From Mobula birostris (Eukaryota), in NCBI RefSeq assembly GCF_030028105.1, contig NC_092377.1:104027177-104091176 (forward strand): a stretch of 64,000 nucleotides of DNA, given 5' to 3'. Each line of letters opens with the position of its first letter. The stretch's first letter is position 1. Shown here piece by piece: positions 2,545 through 58,800 of the stretch. A program made the position numbers and the translations under genes. The notes under the pieces were generated by a model. That model saw nothing but the letters and a program-made list of their open reading frames with translations, had not been told where the DNA came from and searched no databases.

Positions 2545-5500
2545 TGTGCACATACATCTATTGATGCTTCTGGACACATCTTCAGTGATGTTCCTGGAAT
2601 CATCGGGTGTTTCGGATCTTTCATCATCATACAACCTCCTCCAGGTGACCCAGCCGGGGCTGATCAGACCCCAGCTTGTGTCCAGATGGCTAGCTACTTA
2701 TGACTCCATGGCTCCCCTCTTTTGAGCCACAGCCATCTTGAGGCCCTCTCTGCCGCATCGGTAGTACTGCGGATGGCTCTCCTCTTCCTCTCTCCCTCAA
2801 TGCCCAAAATGCTGAACGCTCTAACTAAAGAACGGGCTACGAATCCCCTACAACCAACCTCCACTGGGAGACACCTCGCTCTCCATCCAGCCTGCTGACA
2901 GTTGCTGACCAGTCCTGCGTACTTGGAAAGCTTCCTTTCAAAGGCCTCCTCCAAGCCATCTTCCCATGGGACTGTCAGCTCCAGCAGCACCACTTGCTTA
3001 GTAGACTCAGACACTAGGACAATGTCTGGTCGCAGGGTGGTGGCTGCGATATGGTTGGGGAACTTCAGCTGCCCTTCGAGGTCCACCTACAGCTGCCAGT
3101 CCCTTGCAGAGGTCAGAATGCCTGCAGATGTTCTTTTGGCAGGTATTGGCTGCTCCCCAGCTCTGACAAAGGCAATGGTCTACTTGGAGGGTTGGGACCG
3201 CTTCGCCCACTCAACTCCTGCGCTGATAGCTTCAGCGATGGTCTTCAGGACCTGATCATGCCTCCACCTGTACCGTCCCTCACCAAGTGCCCTTGCACAG
3301 CTGCTGAGGATGTGCTCCAGGGTTCCTTGCTTGGAGCACAGTGGACATGCAGATGACTCTGCCTTGCCCCATGTGTGCAGGTTTGATGGGCTTGGAAGCA
3401 CATCGTACACTGCCTGGATGAGAAATTGGATACGGTGTGATTCGGCTTTCCAAAGATCAGCCCAGGTCACTTTCCTCTCAACCGCATTCTCCCATCTTGT
3501 CCAAGCTCCCTGTTGCTTCATTCCCACCGCCTTGCAGGCTCTCATCTCCTCCGCTACTGCCCTCACCTCCTCCTGAACTAGACGACGCCTTTCCTTCCCT
3601 CTGGTGTCCATTTGGGGAGTTGGAAAGGATCCTAGCCCAGCTCGGCCTTGTGTGACCACTCCCACCAGCCTCCTCTGATGCAGCCTCGCCTCTGCCTCCT
3701 GAACAGCTTCCTCTGCCCTCCACTTCCTGCCAGTACTTACTTGGATCCCTGCTCTAGCCACCTTCGGGTCACTTGAGTCCCTATACTGTAGCACTTCTCT
3801 GGATCTTGTTACCTTGAATTCTTCCTCCAAGGATTTGAAGGGCAGTTGCAGTTTGTTGTGGTGTCCATAGAGTGCGATGCTGCTCAGGCTCTTTGGCAGC
3901 CCCAGCCATCTCCTGAGGTGGTTGCTAACCCTCCTCTCTAAGGTTTCGACTGTTGAGATCAGAACTGCATAGACGAGGAGGGGCCACAGGATTCTGGGAA
4001 GAAAGCCATGCTGATACACCCAGGCTTTAAACTTCCCAGGTAGGCCAGACTTGTCCACAGATTTCAGCCAGCCATCCGACTGGGTGCAGGTTGCCTGAAT
4101 GGATGTTGTGTCCCTTAAAGAGCTGTCAAAGACTTCGCCTAAGCTCTTGACTGGCTTTTCTGTGATGGTTGGGATGGCTGTACCTGCGATGCTGAACCGG
4201 AACTTGTTCTCCACCTTCCCTTTCCTCAGCACCATCGATCTTGATTTGGCAGGTTTGAAACGCATCCGGGCCCACTCCACCAGCTTTTCGAGCCCTTGCA
4301 GAATCCTCCGGCAGCCTGGGACTGATTCTGTGGTGACTGTGAGGTCATCCATGAATGCCCTGATAGGTGGTTGCCGTTGAGCGGAATTCATTCTGGGCCC
4401 TCTGCACTCTGGTTCAGCAGACTTAGTGAGCATGTTCACGGCTAGGGAGAACAGTGTCACTGAGATAGTGCACCCTGTGATGATGCCGACCTCCACCTTG
4501 TGCCAGGTTGATGTAATTGCTCCTGAAGAGACCCTCATCCTGAAGTTGCTGTAATAATCAGCAATAAGGCCTCTGATTCTGCTGGGGACATGATATTTGG
4601 TCAGTGTGAGCTGCACCAGCTTGTGCGGAATGGAGCCATATACACTTGCCAGGTCGAGCCACAACACTGACAGGTTGCCCTTGTTCTCTCTGGCCTCCCT
4701 GATGAGCTGTGTCACCACACCGATGTGCTCCAGACAGCCCGGCATCCCTGAAATGCCACCCTTCTGGACTGATGTATCAATATAGGTGTTCTTTGCTAGG
4801 TAGGTGCACAACCGGTTAGAAACTGCACTGAAGAAGATCTTCGCCTCGACACACAGCAGGGAGATGATGCGAAACTGATCTATCTGGGTGGCATTTTCCT
4901 CCTTCGGGATCCACACCCCTTCAGCCACTCTCCACTGTTCTGGGATCTGCCCCCTTCTCCAGAAGGTTCTCAGGATCTTCCACAGACGCAGCAGGAGTTT
5001 GGGGTAATTCTTGTACACTTTGTACGAGGTGTTGCTTGGTCCTGGAGCTGAGCTTGCCCTTGCTTTGCGGACGACCTCTCTGACTTCCTTTAGCTGCAGC
5101 TCTGACATGTCGAACTGCACATCCGGTTCAGGTGGGTCTATTAGGATGTCGCACTCTCCCAACTCCTGCTCTCTTTCAGAATCATTATATATCTTCTTCA
5201 GATGTTGGTCTATGTCTTCCTGCGAACAGGCCTGTTTCCCACTGCGCTTCTCCCCCAGCAACTCCTTGGTGAACTTGAAGGGGTTGGCGATAAAGGCAGC
5301 ACGTTTTCAAGCCCTTTCACGACGCCGCCTCCAATGCCACCCTGCCCGGCGGAGGACCCTGATCTTCTTTTGTAGTATGCACATCAGCTGGGCCAAGCCA
5401 ATGCGCTCCTCTTCTCCTGCCTCCTTGTATTGGGACTTCAGCGCTTTCATCTCCTGCCTGATGTTGTGGATCCTCAATGCTCTTTGGTTCTTCGAGTAAG

Positions 5501-6079: not shown

Positions 6080-8446
6080 CTGCCTCCTGCCTGTCAGCTA
6101 TTCTGCTATCCATGCCAGTGTCTTTCCTGTAATGCCACAGGATTTCACCTTGTTAAGTAACCTCATGTCTGGCACCTTATCAAACGCCTTCCGAAAATCC
6201 AAGTAAATGCCACCCACTGTATCTCCTTTGTCAACCCTGCTTGTTACTTCCTCAAAGAACTCTAACAGATTTGACAGGTAAGATTTCCCTTTACAGAAAC
6301 CATGCTGATTTTGACATTTTAACATTACTCTCCAAGTACCTCAAAATCTCACTGTCAATAATAGACTCCAACACTTTCCCAACCAATGAGGTTAGGCTTA
6401 TTTGCCTATAATTTCCTTTCTTTTACCTTCTTCTCTTTTTAAAGAGTGGAGTGACATTTGCAATTTTCCAGTCCCCTGGGACCATGCCAGAATCAAGTGA
6501 TTCTTGAACAATCATGACCAATGCATCCGTTATCTCTTCAGCAACCTCTCTCAGGACTCTGGGATGTAGTCCATCTGGTCCAGATGACTTATCCACCCTT
6601 CGACCTTTGAGTTTGCCTAGCACTTCTTCCTTTGTAATAGCATTGGTACTCACTCCTGCTCTCTGACACCTATAGACCTCTGGCACACTGCTAGGGTCTT
6701 CTACAGTCAAGACAGATGTAAAGTACCTATTACATTCATCTGCCATTTCTTTGTCCCTGATTACTACCTCACCAGCATAATTTTCCAGTGGTCCAATATC
6801 AACTCTAACTTTCCTTTTACTCACTATATAACTGAAAGAAAAGTTCTGGTATCCTGCTTTATATTATTGGCTAGTCTACCCTCATATTTCATCTTTTCTC
6901 TTCTTATAGCTTTTGTTGGATTTTAAAGCTTCCCAATCATCCAACATTCCACTCACTTTTGCTATATTATATGCCCTTTTTTTGGCTTTTATGCAGTCCT
7001 TAACTTCCTTTGTCAGCCACAGTTGCCTACCCCTGCCATTCTCTGTGGGACATATCTATCCTGCACCTTGTAAACTGTTCTCAGAAACTTCAACCAACTC
7101 TGCTCTGCTGCCATCCCCACCAGTATCCTCCTCCAATCCACCTGGGCAATCTCCTCTCTCATGCCTCTATAATTCCCTTTATTCCATTGTGATACTGACA
7201 CACGTGAGTTATACTTCAAATTGCAGTATGAATTCAATCATATTATGATCACTGCCTCTGAAGGGTTCCTTTACTTTAAGCTCCCCAAAAAGATCTGGGC
7301 TATTGAATAACCCTCAATCTAAGATAGCTCTTCCCCAAGGAGGCTCGAGCACAAGCTACTCTAAAAAGCCATCTTGTAGGCATTCAACAAATTCCTTCTC
7401 TTGGGATCCGACACCAACCTAACTTTTCCAATCTCCTTGTATATTGAACTCTCCCATTACAATTGCGCTAATACCCTTATTACATGCCTTTCCCAGCTCA
7501 CTTTGCAATCTTAACCCCACTATTAGCTACTATATAATTCCCATCATGGTTTCTTTACCCTTGCAATTTCTTAACTCCACCCACAAAGTTCAACAATCCC
7601 TGACTCTGTCACCCCTTTCTAAAGATGTAATTCCATCAGTTACCAACAGAGCCACACCACCGCCTTTGCCTTCCTGCCTATCCTTTCTATACAAAGTATA
7701 TCCTTTGACGTTCGGCTCCCAACTGTGGCCTTCTTTCAACCATGACTTAGTGATGCCCAGAGCATCATACCAACCAATCTCTAATTGCGCCATGAGTTCG
7801 TCCACCTTGTTCCAATTCGTCAGCTATGCATTTATCTGCCACCTTATTGTATTCCTATACTCACTGTCGCGTGGCATAGGCAGCAATCCTGAGATTTCTA
7901 CCCTTGATGTCCTGCTTCTCAGTTTCCTTCCCAATTCCCTATATCCTTTTATTAAGGAGTTTCTCTCTTTTTCTACCAATATGTACCACAACTTCTGGCT
8001 GCTCACCCTCCCTTTTCAGGATACTGTGGACACATCCAGAAACAACTTGAACACTGGCACCTGGGAGGAAAACTATCATCTGCCTTTCCACTTAGCATCC
8101 ACAGAACAGCCTATGTGTTCCCGACTATAGAGTCCCCTATTACTGCTGCCATCCTCGTCAGTTCCCTACCCTTCTGAGCCACAGGGCCACACTCAGTGCC
8201 AGAGGCATGGCCACTGTTGCTTCCCCCAGGTAGGCCGTCCCCAGCAAAAGTACTCAAAACAGAGTACTAATTGTTGAGGGGGACAACAACAGGGGTTCTC
8301 TCCACTATCTAATGTTCCCCCTTCCTTCTCCTGACAGTCAGCCATTTATCCGTCTCCTGTAGCTCACATCTATTACTGCTTCACTTTCCCTAACAAGCAG
8401 AAGGTCATCGAGCTGCAGCTCCAGTTTCCGAACACGGTCTCGAAGG
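6080..8446 (-). mobile_element. Degenerate CR1 LINE (RT, APE endonuclease and ORF1 SGNH-esterase remnants); continues at 11224-11306 and ~11775-11990
   Basis: QHGFCKGKSYLSNLLEFFEEVT..YLDFRKAFDKV (RT), ITKSWL..GGGVALLV (APE), ISGLLPMPR (ORF1). ORF1 sequence acacggtctcgaagg|agctgcatctcg rejoins across the 8446-11223 insertion. Confidence 0.85.
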
Positions 8447-11223
8447 CCATTACAGAGACTTGGATGGGTCAGGAGCAGGAATGGCTACTTCAAATGCCAG
8501 GCTTTAGACGTTTCAGAATGGACAGGGAGGGAGGCAGAAGAGCTGGGGGCATGCACTGTTAATCAGAGATAGTGTCACGGCTGCAGAAAAGGAGGAAATC
8601 ATGGAGGTGTTGTCTACGGAGTCTCTGTGGGTGGACGTTAGGAACAGGAAGGGGTCAATAACTCTACTGGGTGTTTTTATAGACCACCCAATAGTAACAG
8701 GGACATCGAGGAGCAGATATGGAGACAGCTTCTGGAATGGAGTAATAATAACAGGGTTGTTGTGGTGAGAGTTTTTAATTTCCCAAATATTGATTGGCAG
8801 CTCCCTAGAGTGAGGGGTTTAGATGGGGTGGAGTTTGTTAGGTGTGTTTGGGAAGGTTTCTTGACACAATATGTAGATATGCCTACAAGAGAAGAGGCTG
8901 TACTTGATTAGGTGTTGGGAAATGATCATGGTCAGGTCTCCCAGTGGGAGAGCATTTTGGAGACAGTGATCACAATTCTATCTCTTTACTACAGCATTGT
9001 AGAGGGATAGGAACAGACAAGTTAGGGAAACTTTTAATTGGAGTAAGGGGAACTATGAGGCTATCAGGCAGGAACTTGGAAGCATAAATTGGAAACAGAT
9101 GTTCTCAGGGAAACGTACAGAAGAAATGTGGCAAATGTTTTGGGGATATTCGTGTGGGGTTCTGAGTAAGTACGTTCCAATGAGACAGGGAAAGGATGGT
9201 AGGGTACAAGATCCGCAGTGTACAAAGGCTATTGTAAATCTAGTCAAGAAGAAAAGAAGACCTTATGAAAGGTTGAAAAAACTAGGTAATGATAGGAATC
9301 TAGAAGATAATAAGGCCAGTAGGAAGGAGTTTAAGAATAAAATTAGGAGAGCCAGAAGGGGCCATGAGAAAGCCTTTGGGGAACAGGATTAAGGAAAGCT
9401 GCAAGGCATTCTACAAGTACGTGTAGAGCAAGAGGATAAGGTGTGAGAGAACAGGACCAATCAAATGTGACAGTGGAAAAGTGTTTATGGAACCAGAGGA
9501 AATAGCAGAAGTACTTTATGAATAATTTGCTTCAGTATTCACTACGGAAAAGGATATTTGCGATTGTAGGGATGACTTTCAGTGGACTGAAAAACTTGAG
9601 CACATAGACATTAAGAAAGAGGATGTGCTGAAGCTTTTGGAAAGTATCAAGTTGTATAAAGCACTGGGACTGGATGAGATGTACCCCAGGTTACTGTGGG
9701 AAGCGAGCGAGGAGATTGCTGAGCCTCTGGCAATGATCTTTGCATCATCAGTGGGGACGGGAGAGGTTCTGGAGTATTGGAGGTTGCGGATCTTGTTCCC
9801 TTATTCAAGAAAGGGAGTAGAGATAGCCCAGGAAATTATAGGCCAATGAGTCTTACTTCAGTGGTTGGTAAGTTGATGGAGAAGATCCTGAGAGGCAGGA
9901 TTTATGAACATTTGGAGAGGCATAATATGATTAGGAATAGTCAACATGGCTTTGTCAAAGGGAGGTTGTTCCTTACAAGCCTGATTGAATTTTTTCAGGA
10001 TGTGACTAAACACACTGATGAAGGTAGAGCTGTAAATGTGGTGTATATGGATTTTTGCAAGGCATTTGATAAGGTACCCCATGCAAGACTTATTGAGAAA
10101 GTAATAGGGCATGGGATCCAAGGGGACATTGCTTTGTGGATCCAGAACTGGCTTGCTCACAGAAGGCAAAGAGTGGTTGTAGATGGGTCATATTCTGCAT
10201 GGAGGCCGGTGACCAGTGGTGTGCCTCAGGGATTTGTTCTGGGACGCCTACTCTTTGAGATTTTTATAAATGACCTGGATGAGGAAGTGGAGGGATAGGT
10301 TAGTAAATTTGCTGATGACACAAAAGTTGGGGGTATTGTGGATAGTGTGGAGGGCTGTCAGAGGTTACAACGGGACATTGATAGGATGCAAAACTGGGCT
10401 GAGAAGTGGCGGATGGAGTTCAACCCAGGTAAGTGTGAGGTGGTTCATTTTGGTAGGTCAAATATAATGGCAGAATATAGCTTTAATGGTAAGACTCTTG
10501 GCAGAGTGGAGGATCAGAGTGATCTTGAGGTCCGAGTCCATAGGACACTCAAAGCTGCTACGCAGGTTGACTCTGTGGTTAAGAAGGCATACAGTGGTTT
10601 GGCTTTCATCCATCGTGGGATTGAGTTTAAGAGCTGAGAGATAAAATGTTGCAGCTATATGGGACCCTGGTCAGACCAAACTTGGAGAACTGTGCTCAGT
10701 TCTGGTTGTCTCAGTACAGGAAGGACATGGAAACCATAGAAATGATAAAGAGGAGATTTACAAGGATGTTGCCTGGATTGGGGAGCATGCCTTATGAGAA
10801 TAGGTTGAGTGAACTCTGCCCTTTCTCCTTGGAGTGACGGTGGATGAGAGGTGACCTGATAGTGGTGTACAAGATAATGAGAGGCATTGATCATGTGGAT
10901 AGTCAGAGGCTTTTCCCCAGGGCTGAAATGGCTATCACAAGAGGGCATTGTTTTAAGGTGCTTGGAAGTAGGTACAGAGATGTCAGAGGTAAATTTTTTA
11001 TGCAGAGAGTGGTGAGTGTGTGGAATGGGCTGCCAATGGCAGCAGTGGAGGCAGAAATGATAGGGCCTTTTAAGAGACTCCTTGATGGCTACATGGAGCT
11101 TAGAAAAATAGAGGGCTATGGATAAGCCTAGGTAGTTCTAAGGTAGGGACATGTTCGGCACAGCCTTGTGGGCCGAAGGTCTTGTATTGTGCTGTAGGTT
11201 TTTTATGTTTCTATGTTTCTATG
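8446..11223 (+). mobile_element. 5'-truncated CR1 LINE (APE-RT ORF2 with 3' UTR) nested in the minus-strand CR1
   Basis: Starts at AITETW, contains RT ORF 9777-10298 ([24 protein letters not shown]) and FADD, and ends in a (TTTCTATG)n tail at ~11205-11223. Confidence 0.9.
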
Positions 11224-14306: not shown

Positions 14307-17091
14307 GTCTGTCTGTATCTTGTTTTACGGCAGTCGGCATCCAGCTTAATGGTGCATTACCACCACCTTCTGCTCCGGAATGTGCACTAGACATATATTC
14401 TAAATTCCTTCACCCAATCACACACGCACACACACACAAACCTACACTTTACCCTCCCATCTTTGACCATCCTAGTACCCTATTCCTGTTTATCCGTCAT
14501 ATCCTATAAAAAACCCCTGTACCCCTTAAGAATGCTAAAAATACCCAGACCTGTGCTCTCTCACCCATGCCCAGCAATCCTTTTAATGTGAATTCCTGCA
14601 CCCCCAACTCCCTTAGTTTAATTCTCATCATCTCTCTCTATATCCCATACTTCCTGCAACACAAAACTACATGTTCTACTGACTCCTCTTCCTGACATTC
14701 CTCACACAATCCTGTCTGGTGTTTCCCTATCATTTTCAATGTTTTGTTTAATGCACAATGCCCCAGCTTTAACCTAGTCCACACAATTTCCTCTCTTCTG
14801 TTTCCATTACCTACCCTAGTAACTGCAACACTCTTTTGTATTTGATATAAATGCCTCCCTTTCCCCTCCCTGTCCCATCTTTCTTGCCACATTCAGTTGA
14901 CTTTTTCCCAGATTACACACTTAACCTCTGCTTTACTGATACTAATGTGCATTTCCACATTTTCTTTAACACCCTCTTTGCCAACTCATCCACCCTCTCA
15001 TTCCCCTTCACCCCTACATGTGCTGGAACCCATAGAAATTTTACCTGACCTCCCTGATTTGCAATTCTTGTAACTAACTGAAAGACTTCATAAAGTACAT
15101 CTTGCCAACTGTTTGTGTGAAAAAACCTTAAACTTGCTAGAACTGAGGATGAATCTGAACATATCAATGCTTTGGCTTGTCTGGCTTTCTGCACCCATTG
15201 CAAGGCAACCAACACTGCCAGCATCTCCACTGTAAACACCCCTAACTTATTAGATGTTCTTCTGCTGATTCCAATTTCTTTTGCTGGAATGACCACCCCA
15301 AACCCTGTCACTCCTGTTTCAGGTTCCTTCGCACCATCTGTATAAATGTGAGTATAATCACTAAACTTTTCCATCACATGGCAGTTAAATGCATTTACCA
15401 AATCTGTTTTATATCTTTCTTTCCTTTTTACCTCTAACAAATGCCGGTCTATGTCAGGCCATACAAGCTTCCATGGAGCTACAACTGGATAAACTACTGA
15501 AGGACTTATCCTCAGATCAAACACTCCACATTCTTTCGCGATATCATTCCCTACCCGACTAAAGGTATCCCTCTGAAACCTCCCATTTTCCCAGCACTCC
15601 TGCAACACTCCTTTAGCAGGGTGAGAATCATTGTGCCCCTGCAAGTTAGCCCAGTAGTTTGCCATCAAATACATCCTTCTTAGTTCCAAAGGCATTATTC
15701 CCATTTCTACCTGTAGGGCTGACACTGGTGACGTTTTAAAAGCCTCACTGCACACTCTCAAGGCCTGAGCCTGAATCACATCCAGTTTCCTTATAAGGGA
15801 CCTAGCTGCTGATCCATATACTATATTTCCATAGTCCAACACAGATCTTACTAAAGCCACATACATTCTCTTCAAAGCTGAACAAATTGCTCCCCATTCC
15901 CTACCAGTCAAACATCTCATCACATTTATTACTTTTTTACATTTCTCCTCAACTTTCCTGGTATGGTCTGTCCATGTTAATCATGAATCAAATATAACTC
16001 CCAGAAATTTAAATGATGCATCCCTTTCTAATTCAACCCCATACATCCTTAACTTCTTTCCTACCTCAACTCTTTTCCTGGTAAAAAATACAGTTTGTGT
16101 TTTATCTACTGAAAATCTACATCCCCAATCATAACCCCACTCCACCACTTCATCAATTGCTTCTTGTAGTTTCCTGATTATATGGTCCATGTTCCTGCCT
16201 CTTTTCCACAAGGCCCCATCATCCGCAAACAGTGACCTACCTATATCCACTGGTACCTTTGTGAAGACATCATTGATCATAATCATGAAAAGTAACGGGC
16301 TAATCACACTACCTTGAGGTGTGCCATTTTCCACTATGTACTGTTTTGATAATTCTGATCCAATCCAAACTTGAATTTTTCTACCAAACAAAAAATCTTT
16401 AATCCAATTAAAAACTCTCCCACCAACCCCCATCTTGTGCAGTTTAATTAATAATCCTTCCTTCCACATCATATCATAGGCTTTTTCAATGTCAAAGAAC
16501 ACTGCCACTACTGACTCTCTATTTGCCTGGGCCTTCCTTATTTCAGTCTCTAACATAATCACTGAGTCCATGGAATTCCTTCCCTTTCTAAATCATTCTG
16601 ATAACTTGCCAGCATTCCCCTTTTCTCAAGCTCATACGATAACCTTTCTGTTATCATCCTTTCCATTATCTTACATATACTTGATGTTAATGCAATTGGT
16701 CTGTAGCTAGTGGGTTTTGACAGATCCTTGCCAGGCTTCCTTATTGGAATTACTACTGCTTCTTTCCATGCACTTGGTAATCTTCCCTCCTCCCACACTC
16801 TGTTATAAAAATGCAGCAACTTCAAGAGCACTCCTTCTCCTAGATTTTTTAGCATCACAGAGCAAATCAGATCTTTCCCTGGGGAGGTTGGTCTCGATCT
16901 CTTTATTGCTCTCACCATTTCTGCTGATGTAAATGGATCATCAATTATATCATCTGTTCCTTCCCTCCTGTTTAACACACCTGGGTGTTGGCTCATTATT
17001 CTTTCCCTTCTCCTTCTCCTTTCTTCAGACAAATTTTCTGAACCGTGTATCAGTACAAATGGCTTGGCCATGATCTCAGCCTTATCCCTAC
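14307..17091 (-). mobile_element. 5'-truncated I-clade (Nimb-like) LINE with RT, RNase H and C-terminal zinc knuckle
   Basis: FFDIEKAYD, GTPQGS and LFADD (RT); IYTDGAK..VEMLAV..CSDS..WVPAHVGVKGNERVD (RNase H); CEECQEEESVEHVVLCC. 3' end GGTGGTGGTAATGCACC..GCCGTAAAA followed by (GACA)n. TSD atgaggctggtct (14294-14306) / atgaggccggtct (17092-17104). Confidence 0.9.
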
Positions 17092-35325: not shown

Positions 35326-35742
<417 letters not shown>

Positions 35743-51711: not shown

Positions 51712-54070
51712 AAGGATGTTGCTTGGATTGTGGAGCATGCCTTAATGAGAATAGATTGAGTGAACTTGGCCTTTCCTCCTTGGAGCGGTGGAGGATAAGA
51801 GGTGACCTGATAGAGATGTATAAGATGATGAGAGGCATTGATTGTGTGGATAGGCAGAGGCTTTTTCCCAGGGCAGAAATGGCTAACACGAGGGGGTATA
51901 ATTTTAAGGTGCTTGGAAGTAGGTACAAGGGGAATGTCAGAGGTAAGTTTTTCACGCAGAGAGTGCAGAGAGTGGTGGGTGAATGGAATGCACTGCCAGC
52001 GAAGGTGGTAAAGGTGGATAAAATACGGTCTTTTTAGAGACTCTTAGATAGGCACATGGAGTCAAGTCAAGTCTATTATCATTTCGACCATAAGCTGCTG
52101 GTACAATCACAGTAAAAACAAAACAATGTTCCTCCAGGACCCTGGTGCTACATGAAACAACACAAAACTACACTAGACTGTGTGAGACAACACAAGGCTA
52201 CACTAGACTATGTAAAACAACATAAAAACTGCACTAAATTACAGACCTGCACAGGACTACATAAAGTGCACAAAACTGTGCAGGGCAGTACAATAATTAA
52301 TAAACAAGACAATAAGCACAGGAGAGGACAAATTACAATATAATAATAAATGACGTAGATGTCAGTCTAGACTCTGAGTATTGAGGAGGCTGGTGGCTTG
52401 GGGGAAGAAACTGTTGCACAGTCTGGTCGTGAGAGCCCGAATGCTTTGGGACATTTTGCCAGATGGCAGGAGGGAGAAGAGTTTGTACGAGGGGTGTGTG
52501 GAGTCCTTCACAATACTGTTAGCTTTGCGGATGCAGCGTGTGGCGTAAATGTCTGTAATGGTGGGAAAAGAGACCCCGATGATCTTCTCAGCTGACCTCA
52601 CTAGCCGCTGCAGGGTCTTGCGATCCAAGACGGTGCAATTTCTGAACCAGGCAGTGATGCAGCTACTCAGGATGCTCTCGATACAACCTCTGTAGAACGT
52701 GGTGAGGATGGGGGGTGGGAGATGGACTTTTCTCAGCCTTCGCAGAAAGTAGAGACGCTGCTGTGCTTCCTTGGCTATGGAGCTGGTGTTGAGGGACCAG
52801 GTGAGATTCTTCGCCAGGTGAACACCAAGAAATTTGGTGCTCTTAACGATCTCAACAGAGAAGCTGTCAAATGTTCAGTGGAGAGTGGTTGCTCCGTGCT
52901 CTCCTGAAGTCAACAACCATCTCTTTTGTTTACATTCAGAGACAGGTTGTTGGCTCTGCACCAGTCTGTTAGCCGCTGTACATCCTCTCTGTATGTTGAC
53001 TCATCATTCTTGCTGATGAGACCCACCACGGTCGCGTCATCGGCGAACTTGATGATGTGGTTCGAGCTGTGTGTTGCAGCACAGTCGTGGGTCAGCAGAG
53101 TGAACAGCAGTGGACTGAGCACACAGCCCTGGGGGCCCCCGTGCTCAATGTGATGGTGTTGGAGATGCTGCTCCAGACTGAGGTCTCCCAGTCAGGAAGT
53201 CTAGGATCCAGTTGCAGAGGGAGGTGTTTAGACCCATTAGGCTCAGCTTTCCAATCAGTTTCTGAGGAATGATTGCGTTGAATGCTGAACTGAAGTCTAT
53301 GAACAACATTCGAACATACGTGTCTTTTTTGTCCAGGTGGGTTAGGGCCAGGTGGAGGGTGATGGCAATGGCGTCGTCTGTTGAACGGTTGGGACGGTAC
53401 GTGAACTGCAGGGGATCCAGTGAGGGGGGCAGCAGGGTCTTGATGTGCCTCATGATGAGCCTCTCGAAACACTTCATGATGATGGATGTGAGTGCAACGG
53501 GACGGTAGTCATTGAGGCAGGACACTGAAGACTTCTTTGGCACAGGGATGATGGTGGCAGCCTTGAAGCACGTAGGAACGACGGCGCTGCTCAGGGAGAT
53601 GTTGAAGATGTCAGTGAGAATCTCTGCTAGCTGGTCTGCACATCCTCTAAGCACTCTGCTAGGAATATTGTCTGGACCAGCAGCCTTCCGTGGGTTGACA
53701 CTGCACAGGGTTCTCCTCACATCCGCCATGGTAAGACACAGCACCTTGTCATTGGGAGGAGGAGTGGTCTTCCTCGGCACCACATCATTTTCTGCCTCGA
53801 AACGAGCGTAGAAGTTGTCCAGCGCATCTGGGAGGGAGGCATCACCAGCACAGGCAGGTGATGTTGTCCTGTAGTGGTGATGTCCTGAATGCCCTTCGAC
53901 ATGCATCGCGTGTCGCCACTGTCCTGGAAGTGGCTGTGGAGCTTAGAAAACTAGAGGGCTATGCGGTAGGGAAATTCTGGGCAGCTTCTAGAGTAGGTTA
54001 CATGGTTGGTACAACATTGTGGGCCAAAGGACCTGTAATGTGCTGTAGATTTTCTATGTTTTATGTTCTA
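51712..54070 (+). mobile_element. CR1 3' fragment interrupted by Rex1
   Basis: ENRLSELGL..RGDLIEMYK up to 52061; resumes at 53937 and ends in a TTCTATG-type tail. Confidence 0.85.
52062..53936 (-). mobile_element. 5'-truncated Rex1/Babar LINE
   Basis: [40 protein letters not shown] and a (GACTT)n tail; TSD tggag at 52057-52061 and 53937-53941. Confidence 0.9.
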
Positions 54071-54969
54071 ACAACTGGTACTGTTCAGTAAAGGCACAGT
54101 GCGTTACAACATTCGGTACTGCACAGCAAGGACACAAACGTTACAACAGCCCGCACCGTACTGTAAGGACACAGAAAGCTACACAGCCGGTACTGCACAG
54201 TAAGGGTACAGGGAGTTACAACAGTCAGCACCATACAACAAGGTCAAGGACTTTTACAAAAAATGAACTGAAATGAAAACACAAAGTGCTGGAAACACTC
54301 ACAGCTCAGTCTGCATCGGCTGAATATTTCCAACATTTTCTGGTTTTATTTCAGACACACAGATATATTGTTTTTTACCCAGAGACAGATAACTGACACT
54401 GCACTATATGACCTGTACATCCCTATAGTGAACTGAAAGGAGTCAATGGAAACACACCACACTGCACTGTCCAGAAACAGTCAGCAGGGCTTTACAACAC
54501 CAAGTCCTTCACTACGAGGAGACAGACATATAAAACTCTCCACACTGTGCAGTGAGCACACAGACCTGTACACACCCCACACTCTATTCCACTGTTAAAC
54601 ACCAGTACAAAACCAGCACTTCAATGACAGAGACCAATACAACACTGATACTGGACTGGGATTCATGGAACTGATCAGATAAGAGCAAAGAAACAACATC
54701 TCCTGGTGGGAGAGTCCAGAACAAGAGCAATAGGATGAAAGTTAGAGACAGGCTATGGAAGGGAGATGTCAGGATGGCAGATGGGGGAAGTTGAAACCAA
54801 TAGAAATTTTAGAGTGAGTAAGATGAGTAGGTAAGATAGACGGGTAAGGCAGGGAGCGAGAAAGGTCTGATAGAGTGAAGTGCAATAATTTTAATATAAG
54901 AAGCTTGACAAGTTAAGCAGATGAACTCAGGGCATGGATTTGTACATGAGACCAAGATATTCATTACAG

Positions 54970-55502
54970 TGATGATAATGATGATGATGGCGTTGAGACT
55001 AGTGTGTGATTTGGATTTAAGTGAGGAAGAGTTGCGCAGCGTCAGCCTCACTCTCTCTTCCCAATTCCCATCTGGATCCAGTGGCGAGAGAAGAGTTGAG
55101 ACGGCTGGAGATGGGACTAGGTGCAGTGGATGACTAGGGCATCTTCTGTGTCCTGTCCTGCTCTACGCGTTCCACGACATTTCCAGAGACCGGCTTCTTG
55201 ACTGTTGGACCTTCCATTGGTCTCGTCCACTCAGTCCGCCAGAGTCTGTCTTCACATGCTGGGATAGACAAATCCCTATCTCATGGAGGGTTTGAGACCC
55301 GTCGGCTACCCTCACCTGGTTTAGCCGGCTTGTTGAAGCCGTTGCCCGGGGTGTGGCCGCTGTCGCATGCAAACAGCTACAGGGAGCCACAAGTGAGAGC
55401 TGAGTGCCAGGTGGAGACCAAAGGTGGACAAACCACCCTGAAAAGGATGCGACATGTTCCCCCACCAGAGGTGCTACCGCCCCTCGACACCCCATACACC
55501 CC
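54970..55502 (-). mobile_element. Non-coding SINE-like retroposon, probably RTE-derived, with (CAT)n tail
   Basis: TSD (c)attacag at 54962-54969 and 55502-55509, inside a CR1 AITE codon run; no ORF or Pol III boxes. The RTE 5'-UTR origin is from remembered family resemblance, not a search. Confidence 0.8.
55309..55502 (-). ncRNA. Predicted HDV-like self-cleaving ribozyme at the 5' end of the retroposon
   Basis: P1 GGGGUGU/ACACCCC, P2 CUCUCACUUG/CAGGUGAGGG, P3 GGC/GCC, L3 starting UCC, J1/4 GG, P4 CGGCUU/AAGCCG and J4/2 CUAA, in the canonical nested double-pseudoknot order. Confidence 0.75.
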
Positions 55503-55871
55503 ATTACAGAACACGTTTAAGGAAGGGGCAGGACTGGAGCTCAATGTTCCAGGGTACAGAAGCTACAGGCAGGTTGGAGAAGGAGGTAAGAGAGGAGGGG
55601 GAGTTGTGCTTTTAAAAGGGGAGAACATCACGATGGTACTTAGAGAGGATATTCCTGTGGGATTGTCCAGTGAGACTATATGGGAGGAACGTAGACGTGA
55701 GATGAGGATGATCACCTTGAGTACCATCTGCCTTCCGAACCACTTGATGCAGAACCACAATGTCATCATCGGATTTCCTTCCACTGTATCTGTGTCATCA
55801 GCAGACTTGGACATCTCACATCTCGTTCCCTCCTCATGGTCATTAAACAGTGAACAACTGTGGCCAAGAGC

Positions 55872-58800
55872 CGATCACAAGATCACAAGACAAAGGAGCA
55901 GAAGTAGGCCATTCGGCCCATCAAGTCTGCTCCGCTACTCCACCATGAGCTAAACTATTCTCCCATCTAATTCCAATTTCTGGCTTTTTCCCCATATCCC
56001 TTGATACCCTAACTGATTAGATACCTATCAATCTCCTCCTTGAACACCTTCAATGATCCGGTCTCCACAGCTGTATGTGGCAACAAATTCCATAAGTCCA
56101 CGATCCTCTGGCTAAAAAAAAATTCTCCTCATCTCTGTTTTAAATGGGTACCCTCTAATTCTAAGACTATGGCCGCTTGTCCTGGACTCACCCACCAAGG
56201 GAAACAGCCTTTCTATATCTACTCTGTCCAACCCTTTCAACATTCGAAATGTTTCTATGAGATCCCCTCTCATTCTTCTATACTCTAATGAATACAGTCC
56301 AAGAGCTGACAAACGCTCCTCATATGTTAGCCCCTGCATTCATCCTTGTAAATCTTCTCTGAACTCTCTCCAACATCAGTACATCCTTTCTAAGATAGGG
56401 GGCCCAAAACTGCACACAGTATTCCAAATGAGGTCTCACTAATGCCCCATAGAGCCTCATCAACACCTCCTTACTCTTATACACTATTCCTCTTGAAATG
56501 AATGCCAACATAGCATTCGCTTTCCTTACTGCCGATCCAACCTGGTGGTTAACCTTTACGGTATCCTGCACGAGGACCCCCAAGTCCCTTTGCACTTCTG
56601 ATTTTTGAATTTTCTCCCTATCTAAATAATAATCTGCCCAATTATTTCTTCTTCCAAAATGTACAACTGTACATTTCTCAACATTGTATCTCATCTGCCA
56701 TTTATTTGCCCACTCTCCTAAACTGACCAAGTCTCTCTGCAACCTTTCCGTTTCTTCAACACTTCCTGCTCCTCCACCTATCTTGGTGTTATCCACAAAC
56801 TGAGCCACAAAACCATTTAATCCATAATCTAAATCATCGATATACATTGTAAAAAGAAGCGGCCCCAACACCGACCCCTGCGGAACACCACTAGTAACCA
56901 ACAATCAATCAGATTAGGATCCCTTTATTCCCACCCTTTGCTTTCTGCCTATCAGCCAATGCTCCACCCATTCCAATATCTTTCCTGTAATTCCATGGGC
57001 TCTCATCTTATGCGGCACCTTATCGAAGGCCTTTTGAAAGTCCAAATACACAACATCCACAGCCTCTCCCTTGTCAATCTTATTTGAGATTACCTCAAAA
57101 AATTCCAATAGGTCGGTGAGGCAGGATCTTCCCTTCATGAAACCATGCTGGCTTGGGCCTATCTTGTCATGCATCTGGAGGTATTTCATAATCTCGTCCT
57201 TGAGGATCGACTCCAATAACTTTCCAACTACCGATATCAGACTAATAGGTCTGTAATTTTCTTTTCGCTGCCTCCCTCCTTTCTTAAACAGCGGAACTAC
57301 GTTTGCAACCTTCCAGTTCTCCGGAACCATGCCAGAGTCAATTGATTCCCGGAAGATCATTTCCAATGCCTCCACGATCTCCAAAGCCGCCTCCTTCAGA
57401 ACCCGTGAGTGCACCTCATCCAGTCCAGGAGACTTACCTATTCCTAGTCCATTTAGATTCCCAAGCACTTTCTCTCTAGTAATCTTGACTGTACCTAATT
57501 CTATTCCCTGAGACCTCTGGCTATCAGGTATGTTGCTAATGTCTTCCAATGTGAAGACTGATGCAAAATACTCATTTAGTTCCTCTGCCATCTCTTTGTT
57601 ACCCATTATAATTTCTCCAGCACCATTTTCAATTGGTCCTATGTCCTGTGTCACTCTTTTACTCTCCATATATTTTAAAAAACTCTTAGTATCCTTTTTT
57701 ATGTTAATTGCCAACTTCCTTTTATAATTCATCTTTTCTTTCCTAATGACTTTCTTAGTTTCCTTCTGTAAGTTTTTAAAAGTCATCCAGTCCTCAATTT
57801 TCCCACTAATTTTTGCTTCCTTGTACGCCATCTCTTTTGCTTTTATTTTAGCCTTAACCTCTCTCGTTAGCCACATTTGTGCCATTTTTCCATTCATGAT
57901 TTTCTTTTTTCTTGGAATATATTTTTCCTGCCCTTTCCTTATTTCTTGTAGGAATTTCATCCAATTCTGCTCTGCCATCCCTCCATTTAGTTTACTTTTC
58001 CAATCGACTTGGGCCAGTTCCTCTCTCATACCACTGTAATTTCCCCTGTTCCACTGAAATATCGATACACCTGATCCCAGCTTCTCCTTTTCAAATTTGA
58101 AACTGAACTCAATCATATTATGATCACTACTTCCAAGAGGTTCCATTACCTCCAGCTCCCTAATCGCCTCAGGTTCGTTACACAGCACCCAATCCAAAAC
58201 AGCCGGTCCCCTGGTGTGCTTATGGACAAGCTACTCCAAAAAGCCATCCTGTAGGCATTCTACAAACTCCCTCTCCTGAGGTACAATACCTTCCTGACTT
58301 TCCCAATTAACTTTCACATTAAAATCCCCCATAATTATTTTCCTTCTGACACGCTTTTTCTATTTCCAGCTGCAATTTGTAGTCCACATCCCGGCTGCTG
58401 TTTGGAGGCCTGTATATAACTGCTATTAGTGTCTTTTTACCCCGGCCATTTCTTAATTCTACCCATAAGGATTCTACCTCTTCTGATCCTATGTCCCTTC
58501 TTTCTAGTGATTTGATATCGTTACTTACCATCAGGGCCACGCCACCCCCTTTACCTACCTTATCTTTCCTATACACTGTGTATCCTGGGATATTCAGCTC
58601 CCAATCACATCCACCATTTAGCCATGACTCGGTGATGGCCACAATGTCATATCTTTTAGCCTGTAGCTATACAACAAGGTCATCCAATTTATTTCTAATG
58701 CTATGTACATTTAAGTACAGTACATTTAGATCAGTATCTGTTACTGATTTTGCTATATTTGGTGAAAGAGGCAGGAGGAGAAGATGGCAGCGCGACGCAG

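What the first reader, a model, noticed from the sequence alone, without database searches (positions are those of the whole stretch)
54970..55502. Ribozyme-headed SINE: complete HDV-like fold whose cleavage site marks the element's 5' end
Seen on the minus strand: P1 5' GGGGUGU (55502-55496, repeated at 55493-55487) pairs with ACACCCC (55354-55348). P2 CUCUCACUUG (55399-55390) pairs with CAGGUGAGGG (55318-55309) over 10 bp with two G-U pairs. P3 is GGC (55388-55386) / GCC (55357-55355). L3 starts UCC and can form P1.1 with GG at 55347-55346. P4 is CGGCUU-caac-AAGCCG, and J4/2 is CUAA with the candidate catalytic C at 55324. The element starts at the first G of P1, directly against the TSD. 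Established: HDV-like ribozymes process the 5' ends of R2 and RTE retrotransposons, and ribozyme-bearing non-autonomous R2 derivatives (SIDEs) exist in insects. Inference: this is a promoterless, non-coding retroposon that cuts itself out of read-through transcripts and borrows an RTE-type RT through its (CAT)n tail, a SIDE-like family in a vertebrate.
Basis: partly seen in the sequence, partly recalled or inferred. Interest (0 to 1): 0.85.

Follow-up and report, generated by a model that had tools for sequence, protein, structure and literature searches.

The report
Ribozyme-headed short LINE derivative
A 532-base jumping-gene copy begins exactly at an RNA fold of the hepatitis-delta self-cutting type; that arrangement is already known, but this fold has an unusual extra hairpin in its catalytic loop, and cutting has not been tested.

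Summary
The element is a real retro-insertion. It has an 8-bp target-site duplication, and an empty-site joint is seen in all 4 runs laid. It belongs to a very high-copy family found under four organism labels.

The fold is not a chance match. A metagenome pattern search returned 12 loci, and 11 of them carry the same head. P2 and P4 keep pairing through changes on both sides. A covariance model built only from six of those loci hits the window once, at 55304-55405(-), with 100.3 bits and E about 9e-23.

In three of the loci the head sits in front of an endonuclease plus reverse-transcriptase ORF. Two of these are complete single-ORF LINEs with RTE-type architecture. The window element shares about 390 nt with such a LINE's 5' UTR and encodes nothing. 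It is therefore a SIDE-like deletion derivative, not a Pol III SINE.

Two features go beyond the textbook fold. J1/2 is a structured 96-nt domain closed by the second GGGGUGU. A conserved hairpin sits inside L3. Rfam detects none of these heads.

Not shown here: cleavage, the ray's own partner LINE, and how the tail is recognised.

This scan has noted the same family before on other DNA of this genome (s1-145255, s1-145075, s1-145485). It is a new variant of a known kind.

The parts
55502..55509 (-). 5' copy of the target-site duplication CTGTAATG (G55502 is shared with P1)
   Evidence: joint 54961->55502, skipping 540 with 8 letters fitting both sides, 1 contig in each of 4 runs
54962..54969 (-). 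3' copy of the target-site duplication
54970..55502 (-). whole short retroposon (532-533 nt)
   Evidence: depth about 230 outside and 7e4-3e5 inside in X1; similar in X5, X9, X10
55496..55502 (-). P1 5' strand GGGGUGU; predicted cleavage is 5' of G55502
   Evidence: identical in 9 of 9 complete heads
55400..55495 (-). J1/2, a structured 96-nt peripheral domain. The closing helix pairs 55492-55487 with 55407-55402 (P1.2-like)
   Evidence: RNAalifold; 10 of 53 and 7 of 68 predicted pairs, over the whole head, keep pairing after changes on both sides
55390..55399 (-). P2 5' strand
55386..55388 (-). P3 5' strand GGC
   Evidence: never varies
55378..55385 (-). L3 5' side UCCCUGUA: U, CC (P1.1 partners 55384-55383), and G at the sixth place
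   Evidence: UCCNNG in 10 of 11 parsed rows, UUC in L002; U/G role from PMC3774820
55359..55377 (-). extra hairpin inside L3: GCUGU / 9-nt loop / ACAGC
   Evidence: the stem is kept while the loop varies from 7 to 10 nt in length and in sequence; changes are one-sided only
55355..55357 (-). P3 3' strand GCC
   Evidence: fixed by the search pattern in the relatives
55348..55354 (-). P1 3' strand ACACCCC
   Evidence: fixed by the search pattern in the relatives
55346..55347 (-). GG of P1.1
55326..55341 (-). P4 hairpin CGGCUU-CAAC-AAGCCG
   Evidence: 4 of 6 pairs change on both sides; a subfamily with another P4 appears loose ends
55319..55325 (-). J4/2 GCUAAAC with candidate catalytic C55324
   Evidence: role inferred from the HDV fold
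55309..55318 (-). P2 3' strand
55115..55500 (-). part homologous to the 5' UTR of ribozyme-headed LINEs
   Evidence: L010 80.2% over 262 nt and 76.4% over 55 nt; L008 73.3% over 322 nt
54997..55113 (-). 3' module of unknown origin, conserved with the L003 short element; includes a predicted hairpin at 55020-55052
   Evidence: no match in L005, L008 or L010
54970..54989 (-). tail of CAT-type triplets
   Evidence: period 3, 6.7 copies, 88% matches

Best explanation
This is one copy of a high-copy, non-coding, non-autonomous retroposon. It was made from a ribozyme-headed APE+RT LINE with RTE-type architecture by loss of the coding part, so it is SIDE-like.

Its first 194 nt fold as an HDV-like double-pseudoknot ribozyme, with a structured J1/2 domain and an extra hairpin inside L3.

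Inferred mechanism: the element is transcribed as part of a longer RNA. The ribozyme cuts 5' of the first G of P1, which sets the element's exact 5' end. The LINE's protein then copies the RNA from its 3' end into a staggered nick, giving the 8-bp duplication.

Shown here: the fold, its conservation and covariation, the fixed 5' end, the insertion hallmarks, and the LINE origin of the head. Inferred: catalysis, read-through transcription, and use of the LINE's enzyme.
For: Insertion: the TSD and the empty-site joint 54961->55502 in 4 of 4 runs.

Family: 5843, 5059, 5211 and 8315 contig pieces were laid from four organism labels, and depth falls about 60-fold beyond 55512.

Fold across relatives: 11 of 12 metagenome loci hold the same head. 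On 13 rows, 94.9% of 351 cells pair, against 31.9-49.3% when partners are slid. Six pairs change on both sides, a count reached by 0 of 500 shuffles. P2 forms 10-12 contiguous bp in all 10 rows that carry both strands, using two different sequence sets. P4 uses at least 5 different stems.

This copy: the family majority has C where the window has U55392, which turns a G-U pair into G-C.

Independent model: built without the window, it gives one hit, 100.3 bits, E about 9e-23, with no non-standard pair marked.

Head and LINE: L005 (1056 aa) and L008 (1096 aa) have single ORFs with Exo_endo_phos and RVT_1 behind the head. L010 has both domains too. Their 3' UTRs are 26 and 35 nt and end in AAG repeats, as described for RTE elements (PMC2887409, passages).

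Depth of conservation: the heads are kept although the L005 and L008 proteins are only 31% identical.

Precedent: ribozyme cleavage at the 5' junction is reported for the R4, L1 and RTE clades (PMC3774820, passage), SIDEs are described in PMC3414825 (passages), and structured J1/2 domains speed catalysis (PMC4908430, passages).
Against: Rfam's HDV-type models give no hit at E up to 10 in the window region or in six related loci.

L3 is 28 nt with a hairpin, whereas the described cores have a short single-stranded L3 (PMC4908430; 15 nt for P1.1+P3+L3 together in R2, PMC3774820). Such an insert could impair catalysis.

P1, P3 and P1.1 never vary. Their 3' strands were fixed by my search pattern, so they give no covariation evidence.

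The L3 hairpin shows only one-sided changes.

The 13 rows represent only about 7 independent lineages.

The 3' module (about 117 nt) matches none of the three LINEs at hand, and the ray's own LINE 3' end was not seen.

The window copy differs from the depth-weighted majority at 28 or more of 532 places in X1, so this particular copy may be dead.
Confidence: 0.75

Rival explanations
1. The head is a conserved structured 5' UTR with the HDV-like topology, but it no longer cuts. It might serve translation, 5' protection or protein binding. The fixed 5' end would then come from a transcription start or from full-length copying, not from self-cleavage.
For: The L3 hairpin sits in the catalytic loop and is atypical. 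Rfam gives no hit. Non-catalytic roles such as IRES-like activity and 5' protection are discussed for such folds (PMC6765202; PMC13708176). L1Tc combines a promoter and a ribozyme in the same 77 nt (abstract listing of PMC3383444).
Against: All the core elements are kept: U, CC and G of L3, the GG of P1.1, and the J4/2 C. L3's UCCNNG is kept in 10 of 11 parsed rows, and it was not part of the search pattern. The first GGGGUGU is invariant in 9 of 9 heads while the second copy varies. The fold is conserved across LINEs whose proteins are 31% identical.
Confidence: 0.17
2. The fold is a chance look-alike in an ordinary SINE or repeat.
For: The MFE z-score is 0.03. The long J1/2 and L3 give a hand-drawn fold many degrees of freedom.
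Against: A model built from other organisms' loci hits only this site. P2 and P4 covary. ARAGORN finds no tRNA gene in 54800-55700.
Confidence: 0.02
3. The short element is not a deletion derivative of a LINE. It would be an independent composite: a ribozyme head captured by template jump and joined to an unrelated 3' module, like the R2/R1 hybrid SIDEs.
For: The 3' module at about 55113-54997 matches none of L005, L008 or L010. In L001 and L012 the head is joined to unrelated gene pieces. Hybrid SIDEs are known (PMC3414825).
Against: About 390 nt, well beyond the ribozyme, are shared with LINE 5' UTRs. The last 22 nt of the L003 short element resemble the L008 3' UTR (86%, E 0.01-0.08). The ray's own LINE was not available for comparison.
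Confidence: 0.2

Closest known systems
R2 SIDEs and R2/R1 hybrid SIDEs of Drosophila (PMC3414825)
   Same: Short, non-coding, not Pol III transcribed. An HDV-like ribozyme from a LINE sits at the 5' end, joined to a 3' end that a LINE enzyme can use.
   Different: Here the parent has RTE-type architecture. Insertion is dispersed with an 8-bp TSD rather than in rDNA. There are thousands of contig pieces per run rather than a few copies. The host is a vertebrate (a ray, according to earlier scan notes). The LINE origin of the 3' end is not shown.
HDV-like ribozymes at the 5' end of RTE, R4, L1Tc and baggins elements (Ruminski et al. 2011, as cited in PMC3774820 and PMC6765202)
   Same: The ribozyme defines the 5' end of a LINE that lacks a promoter, with cleavage at the element's first nucleotide.
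   Different: I could not read Ruminski et al. because it is not held. Rfam's models of described HDV-type families do not detect this head. L3 carries a hairpin.
drz-Agam-2 type ribozymes with a structured J1/2 (P1.2) domain (PMC4908430)
   Same: [quoted passage not shown]
   Different: Here the domain is about 96 nt. Its closing helix is formed by a near repeat of the P1 strand, so alternative pairings are possible.
NARTc / RIME with the L1Tc ribozyme in trypanosomatids (PMC3185411 and PMC3383444 from listings; PMC3414825 passage)
   Same: A truncated non-autonomous partner shares the ribozyme-bearing 5' end of its LINE.
   Different: A different LINE clade and host. In L1Tc a minimal 77-nt ribozyme doubles as a promoter.
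Canonical HDV and CPEB3 ribozymes
   Same: The strand order P1-P2-P3-L3-P3'-P1'-P1.1-P4-J4/2-P2', a 7-bp P1, a 3-bp P3, L3 starting UCC, and J4/2 with a C.
   Different: The first P1 pair is G-C here. My recollection, not from any call, is that HDV has a G-U wobble there. J1/2 is 96 nt and L3 is 28 nt with a hairpin.

Membership tests
HDV-like self-cleaving ribozyme | Nested double pseudoknot with strand order P1, P2, P3, L3, P3', P1', P1.1, P4, J4/2, P2' | tested here: met
   33 pairs in 6 helices, 94.9% of 351 cells paired
HDV-like self-cleaving ribozyme | Helices supported by compensatory change | tested here: met
   Met for P2 and P4. P1, P3 and P1.1 never vary, and their 3' strands were fixed by the search pattern, so they say nothing either way.
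HDV-like self-cleaving ribozyme | Core letters: L3 with U, CC (P1.1) and a G five places after the U; GG after P1; a C in J4/2 | tested here: met
   (UCCNNG in 10 of 11 parsed rows); the role of U and G is from PMC3774820
HDV-like self-cleaving ribozyme | Short unbroken single-stranded L3 (typical of described members, not a formal criterion) | tested here: not met
   L3 is 28 nt with a 5-bp hairpin, kept in all 11 parsed rows. This is the basis for calling it a variant.
HDV-like self-cleaving ribozyme | Site-specific self-scission 5' of the first P1 nucleotide | not testable with these tools
   Indirect only: 9 of 9 complete heads begin at GGGGUGU with 8 distinct upstream flanks, and depth drops at that point.
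Rfam HDV-type families | A match to a curated covariance model | tested here: not met
   No HDV-type match at E up to 10 in window 52000-58000 or in six related loci. These models cannot span the 96-nt J1/2 and the L3 hairpin.
SIDE-type non-autonomous LINE derivative | 5' end shared with an autonomous LINE, ribozyme included | tested here: met
   (L010 80.2% over 262 nt; L008 73.3% over 322 nt); LINE ORFs
SIDE-type non-autonomous LINE derivative | 3' end shared with the LINE that mobilises it | tested here: inconclusive
   The ray's LINE 3' end was not seen. L003 against L008 gives only 22 nt at 86%. The 3' module matches none of the three LINEs.
SIDE-type non-autonomous LINE derivative | No coding capacity for the enzyme, and no Pol III head | tested here: met
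   blastx against LINE ORFs gives nothing below E 0.59. The longest ORF, 113 aa, finds only two translated copies. ARAGORN finds no tRNA gene. A and B boxes were not scanned.
RTE-clade LINE (the partner) | Single ORF of about 1000 aa with APE and RT, and a very short 3' UTR made of simple repeats | tested here: met
   L005 and L008, compared with the description in PMC2887409
RTE-clade LINE (the partner) | RT groups with RTE references in a tree | not tested
   No named reference sequences were at hand. PDB relatives are only L1 ORF2p and R2.

The most novel reading that the evidence does not exclude
The head may represent an old, widespread structural subclass of HDV-like ribozymes. The catalytic loop L3 carries a conserved extra hairpin, making a three-way junction at the active site. 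A near repeat of the P1 strand closes a large J1/2 domain. The subclass is shared by LINE lineages whose proteins are only about 31% identical, in a ray and in unrelated hosts seen in metagenomes. It is invisible to Rfam models, and probably to descriptor searches that require a short L3. If it is active, many HDV-like ribozymes may have been missed. The hairpin, or the competing pairings of the two GGGGUGU copies, could gate cleavage or bind the LINE protein.
Probability: 0.45. Interest if true: 0.65.

Novelty: new variant of a known kind. Interest (0 to 1): 0.45.

Why it matters
HDV-like ribozymes at LINE 5' ends and ribozyme-headed deletion derivatives are both established, so the principle is not new.

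Three things are worth recording:
1. The non-autonomous family is very abundant in a vertebrate lineage, which gives a natural set of thousands of ribozyme copies.
2. The core tolerates, and conserves, a hairpin inside L3, the loop that builds the active site. That is a direct and cheap test case for how much the delta fold can be decorated.
3. Current family models miss the whole subclass, so surveys of delta-type ribozymes in animal genomes are probably incomplete.

Tried and rejected
Rfam scans with permissive thresholds gave no HDV-type match. They were run on window 52000-58000 and on six related loci.

Single-sequence MFE folding was uninformative: z 0.03, and it cannot draw pseudoknots.

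A second copy in the window was sought with blastn and with the covariance model. Neither found one.

I tried to collect copies through the 113-aa ORF. Only 2 proteins turned up among 7 candidates. Both are translated copies of the element.

A pattern that leaves P1 free found nothing in genome contigs or viral contigs, so no variation in P1 could be sampled.

blastx of the element against the LINE ORFs gave nothing, so the 3' module is not a recognisable piece of coding sequence.

PDB relatives of the LINE ORF are L1 ORF2p and R2 only, which does not resolve the clade. I ran no further search on clade names, because source names rarely give the clade.

The second GGGGUGU as an alternative P1 is rejected. 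Copies start at the first one. The second varies (GGGGUGC, GGGUUGU, or absent in L005/L007). It pairs with GCACUC in both sequence groups.

The hairpin stem as the real P3 is rejected. Its loop holds no conserved CC for P1.1, while UCC directly after GGC is conserved.

I built no family consensus and only described majority letters at single places.

Literature:
- Searches found no paper describing an L3 hairpin in an HDV-like ribozyme.
- In one search none of the 15 listed papers holds 'HDV-like ribozyme'. The search required only 2 of its 6 terms, so it does not exclude such a paper.
- Ruminski et al. 2011 is not held.
- I asked for no supplements. The supplementary ribozyme lists of Webb 2009, Ruminski 2011 and later surveys could contain this variant.

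Full report
WHAT IS THERE

On the minus strand, an element of 532-533 nt runs from 55502 to 54970. It is flanked by CTGTAATG at 55509-55502 and at 54969-54962. It ends in CAT-type triplets at 54970-54989 (period 3, 6.7 copies).

In addition, G55400-U55308 could lengthen P2 to 11 pairs. G55502 belongs to both the duplication and P1, so the start is ambiguous by one base.

No ORF in the element suggests a protein. Twelve ORFs of 30 aa or more overlap 54900-55600. The longest on the element's strand, 113 aa, found only 2 proteins among 7 candidates in the large protein collection. Both are translations of other copies of the same element, and P0002 covers element positions 56-500 in two frames.

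ARAGORN finds no tRNA gene in 54800-55700. The window holds no second copy, by blastn or by covariance model.

IT IS A RETRO-INSERTION OF A VERY ABUNDANT FAMILY

I laid the contigs of four runs, from four organism labels, on 54800-55700 at 80% likeness. The runs were chosen from the 24 listed. None of those is on record as RNA, and none holds half of the sampled words.

The numbers of contig pieces laid were 5843, 5059, 5211 and 8315.

In X1 the summed depth is about 230 in 54955-54985 and 7.7e4 in the next bin. It stays at 1e5-3e5 across most of the element. It then falls from 3.2e4 in 55482-55512 to 537 in 55513-55543. The other three runs show the same profile.

One contig in each of the four runs joins 54961 to 55502, skipping 540 letters, with 8 letters fitting both sides. 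This is an empty site with the 8-bp duplication. It is visible because the flanks themselves belong to a low-copy repeat (depth 50-500).

In X10, 57 contigs leave the stretch at 55503 with unlike continuations (agreement 0.36).

In X1 the window copy differs from the depth-weighted majority at 28 or more places in the element. One of these is 55392, where the majority C makes the U-G pair of P2 into C-G. Two others fall in loops: 55381 in L3 and 55334 in the P4 loop.

Loose ends at 55339-55349 reveal a subfamily with a different P4 sequence, followed by the same GGCUAAACC.

THE FOLD IS CONSERVED FAR BEYOND THIS GENOME

I then scanned JGI and GenBank metagenome contigs for the P3'-P1'-GG stretch and the J4/2 stretch, separated by a gap. 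This returned 12 loci.

Eleven of them carry the same head. L004 is a G+C-rich chance match.

There are nine complete heads: the window, L003, L005, L007, L008, L009, L010, L011 and the second head of L012. All begin with GGGGUGU. They have 8 distinct upstream flanks, because L005 and L007 share theirs.

- 94.9% of 351 cells pair, against 31.9-49.3% when partners are slid by 1-3 columns.
- Six pairs, covering 16 cells, change on both sides. None of 500 shuffles reaches these values or the covariation score.
- The count of further pair types is less clear (42 of 500 shuffles reach it).

The two P2 pairs scored as unpaired in five rows are an alignment effect. That sequence group has one extra base pair. 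Read sequence by sequence, P2 is 10-12 contiguous pairs in all 10 rows that hold both strands. It uses CUCUCA(C/U)(U/C)UG with CA(G/A)GUGAGGG in one group and UUCUCGGCCAG with CUGGUCGAGGA in the other.

P4 appears as at least five different 5-bp stems.

Limits of this evidence:
- The pattern fixed the 3' strands of P3 and P1, the GG, and J4/2, so their invariance is by construction.
- P1, P3 and P1.1 never vary and therefore say nothing for or against the fold.
- Several rows are near duplicates, leaving about seven independent lineages.

As an independent test, I built a covariance model of the core (P2, P3, L3 hairpin, P4; 100 positions, 23 pairs). It used six metagenome loci only, without the window. 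It hits the window once, at 55304-55405(-), with 100.3 bits, E about 9e-23 (rough calibration), over the full model length and with no non-standard pair marked.

TWO ADDITIONS TO THE TEXTBOOK FOLD

(a) J1/2 is 96 nt (55495-55400). RNAalifold folds it as a long rod in both sequence groups. The base of the rod is the second GGGUGU (55492-55487) paired with GCACUC (55407-55402), directly between P1 and P2. Over the whole head, 10 of 53 and 7 of 68 predicted pairs keep pairing after changes on both sides.

This explains the doubled P1 strand. The second copy varies (GGGGUGC in L010, GGGUUGU in L009, absent in L005/L007), while the first never does.

[quoted passage not shown] J1/2 loops of 216-498 nt occur in silkmoth R2 (PMC3774820, passage).

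(b) L3 is UCCNNGWA, then a 5-bp hairpin GCUGU/ACAGC with a loop of 7-10 nt that varies in sequence, then one G. The 5' side keeps the U, the CC for P1.1, and a G five places after the U. These are the letters said to be conserved in L3 of HDV-like ribozymes, where U and G form a reverse wobble (PMC3774820, passage).

The hairpin stem shows only one-sided changes. Its support therefore comes from a kept stem around a free loop, not from compensatory change.

In the sources I could read, L3 is described as a single-stranded part of the core (PMC4908430), and P1.1+P3+L3 together make up 15 nt in R2.

RNAalifold also offers a nested alternative, GUGGCU/GGCCAC, which competes with P1.

Rfam finds no HDV-type family at E up to 10 in the window region or in six related loci.

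WHERE THE HEAD COMES FROM

In L005 and L008 the head is followed by a single ORF of 1056 and 1096 aa (measured stop to stop). Each has Exo_endo_phos and RVT_1 domains. In L010 the same two domains follow, but they are broken by a frame change and cut off by the contig end.

The 3' UTRs are 26 and 35 nt long and end in AAG repeats. A single ORF of about 990 aa, an extremely short 3' UTR made of simple repeats, and duplications of 6-12 bp are the features given for RTE elements (PMC2887409, abstract and passages).

I did not place the RT in a tree. PDB relatives are L1 ORF2p and R2 proteins only.

The L008 and L010 proteins are 58-63% identical. L005 is 31% identical to L008. So the head, hairpin included, is older than these lineages.

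The window element matches the L010 5' UTR at 80.2% over 262 nt and at 76.4% over 55 nt further on. It matches L008 at 73.3% over 322 nt. It matches none of the ORFs (blastx, best E 0.59).

It also aligns over nearly its whole length (1-506 of 533, 71%) with a roughly 620-nt short element in L003. That element ends with about 22 nt resembling the L008 3' UTR, followed by CATCATCA.

The part at about 55113-54997, which includes a predicted hairpin at 55020-55052 kept in both copies, has no counterpart in the three LINEs.

Most family contigs diverge from the window copy at 54984-54986, inside the CAT run. They continue with about 30 other letters.

So the LINE origin of the head is shown. The origin of the 3' module, and what the enzyme recognises, are not.

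MECHANISM

The best reading follows the model established for R2 and reported for R4, L1 and RTE: cleavage at the element's 5' junction (PMC3774820, passage citing Ruminski et al.). It also follows the model for baggins and RTE elements that lack their own promoters (PMC6765202, passage), and the definition of SIDEs as short internally deleted, ribozyme-headed, non-Pol-III elements (PMC3414825, abstract and passages).

The steps are:
1. Transcription as part of a longer RNA.
2. Self-cleavage 5' of G55502.
3. Target-primed reverse transcription by the LINE protein.

Only the sequence-level consequences are shown here. The chemistry is inferred.

COMPARISON WITH EARLIER NOTES OF THIS SCAN

After my first reading, I found that the family had already been noted on other DNA of the same genome. 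It was followed up as a 'ribozyme-headed deletion copy of a LINE' with an L3 hairpin. Those notes also call the genome a ray or manta, which I did not verify.

I reused the deletion-copy idea and tested it with independent data. My results agree on the head and on the hairpin. The 3' end remains open.

NOVELTY

The arrangement is known. The combination of an L3 hairpin and a repeat-closed J1/2 domain, conserved across distant LINE lineages and missed by Rfam, is a new variant as far as I could check.

Searches found no description of it. In one search none of the 15 listed papers holds 'HDV-like ribozyme', but that search required only 2 of its 6 terms and so does not exclude one.

Ruminski et al. 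2011 is not held, and I looked at no supplementary lists. The claim that it is unpublished is therefore weak.

Noticed in passing
L001 1-2417; L003 2719-4308; L012 1-2056: In contigs with the prefix WLWI01, the same ribozyme head lies directly upstream of, and in the same direction as, intron-less host-type ORFs or ORF pieces. These are Cullin (L001), UCH (L003, just behind the short element), and a Peptidase_M16 piece plus an OTU piece between two heads (L012). In L001, likeness to the element stops right after the P2 3' strand. They may be chimeric retro-copies made by template jump.
   Followed up: partly
window 56344-58338 (-), also 53187-53891 (-), 4416-5396 (-), 9786-10289 (+), 16206-16954 (-), 6321-7028 (-): These are remnants of other LINE reverse transcriptases, only 20-31% identical to the ribozyme-headed LINE ORFs (tblastn). 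The first lies just upstream of the element on the same strand. The element's flanks are a low-copy repeat, so the element probably sits inside the 3' part of an older LINE.
   Followed up: no
window 54984-54986: Most family contigs diverge from the window copy inside its CAT run and continue with about 30 letters that can form a short hairpin (loose ends; 43, 23 and 55 contigs; agreement 0.63-0.66). The CAT tail may therefore be special to this copy or its subfamily.
   Followed up: no
window 55141-55192: Family depth drops 10- to 100-fold inside the element, with clustered differences at CpG sites. This looks like a hypervariable stretch, or a block that only some subfamilies have.
   Followed up: no
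L008 9005-9075: After the AAGAAGA tail of the LINE, the last 16 or so letters of its 3' UTR are repeated. PMC2887409 describes 3' partial copies of this kind for RTE elements.
   Followed up: no
L003 2576-2657 (+): Rfam gives a sub-threshold match to the mir-310 family (33.2 bits, gathering score 48, E 0.00037), about 60 nt upstream of the short element.
   Followed up: no
window 35613-35741: A run of 129 N, either a gap or masked. I left it untouched.
   Followed up: no
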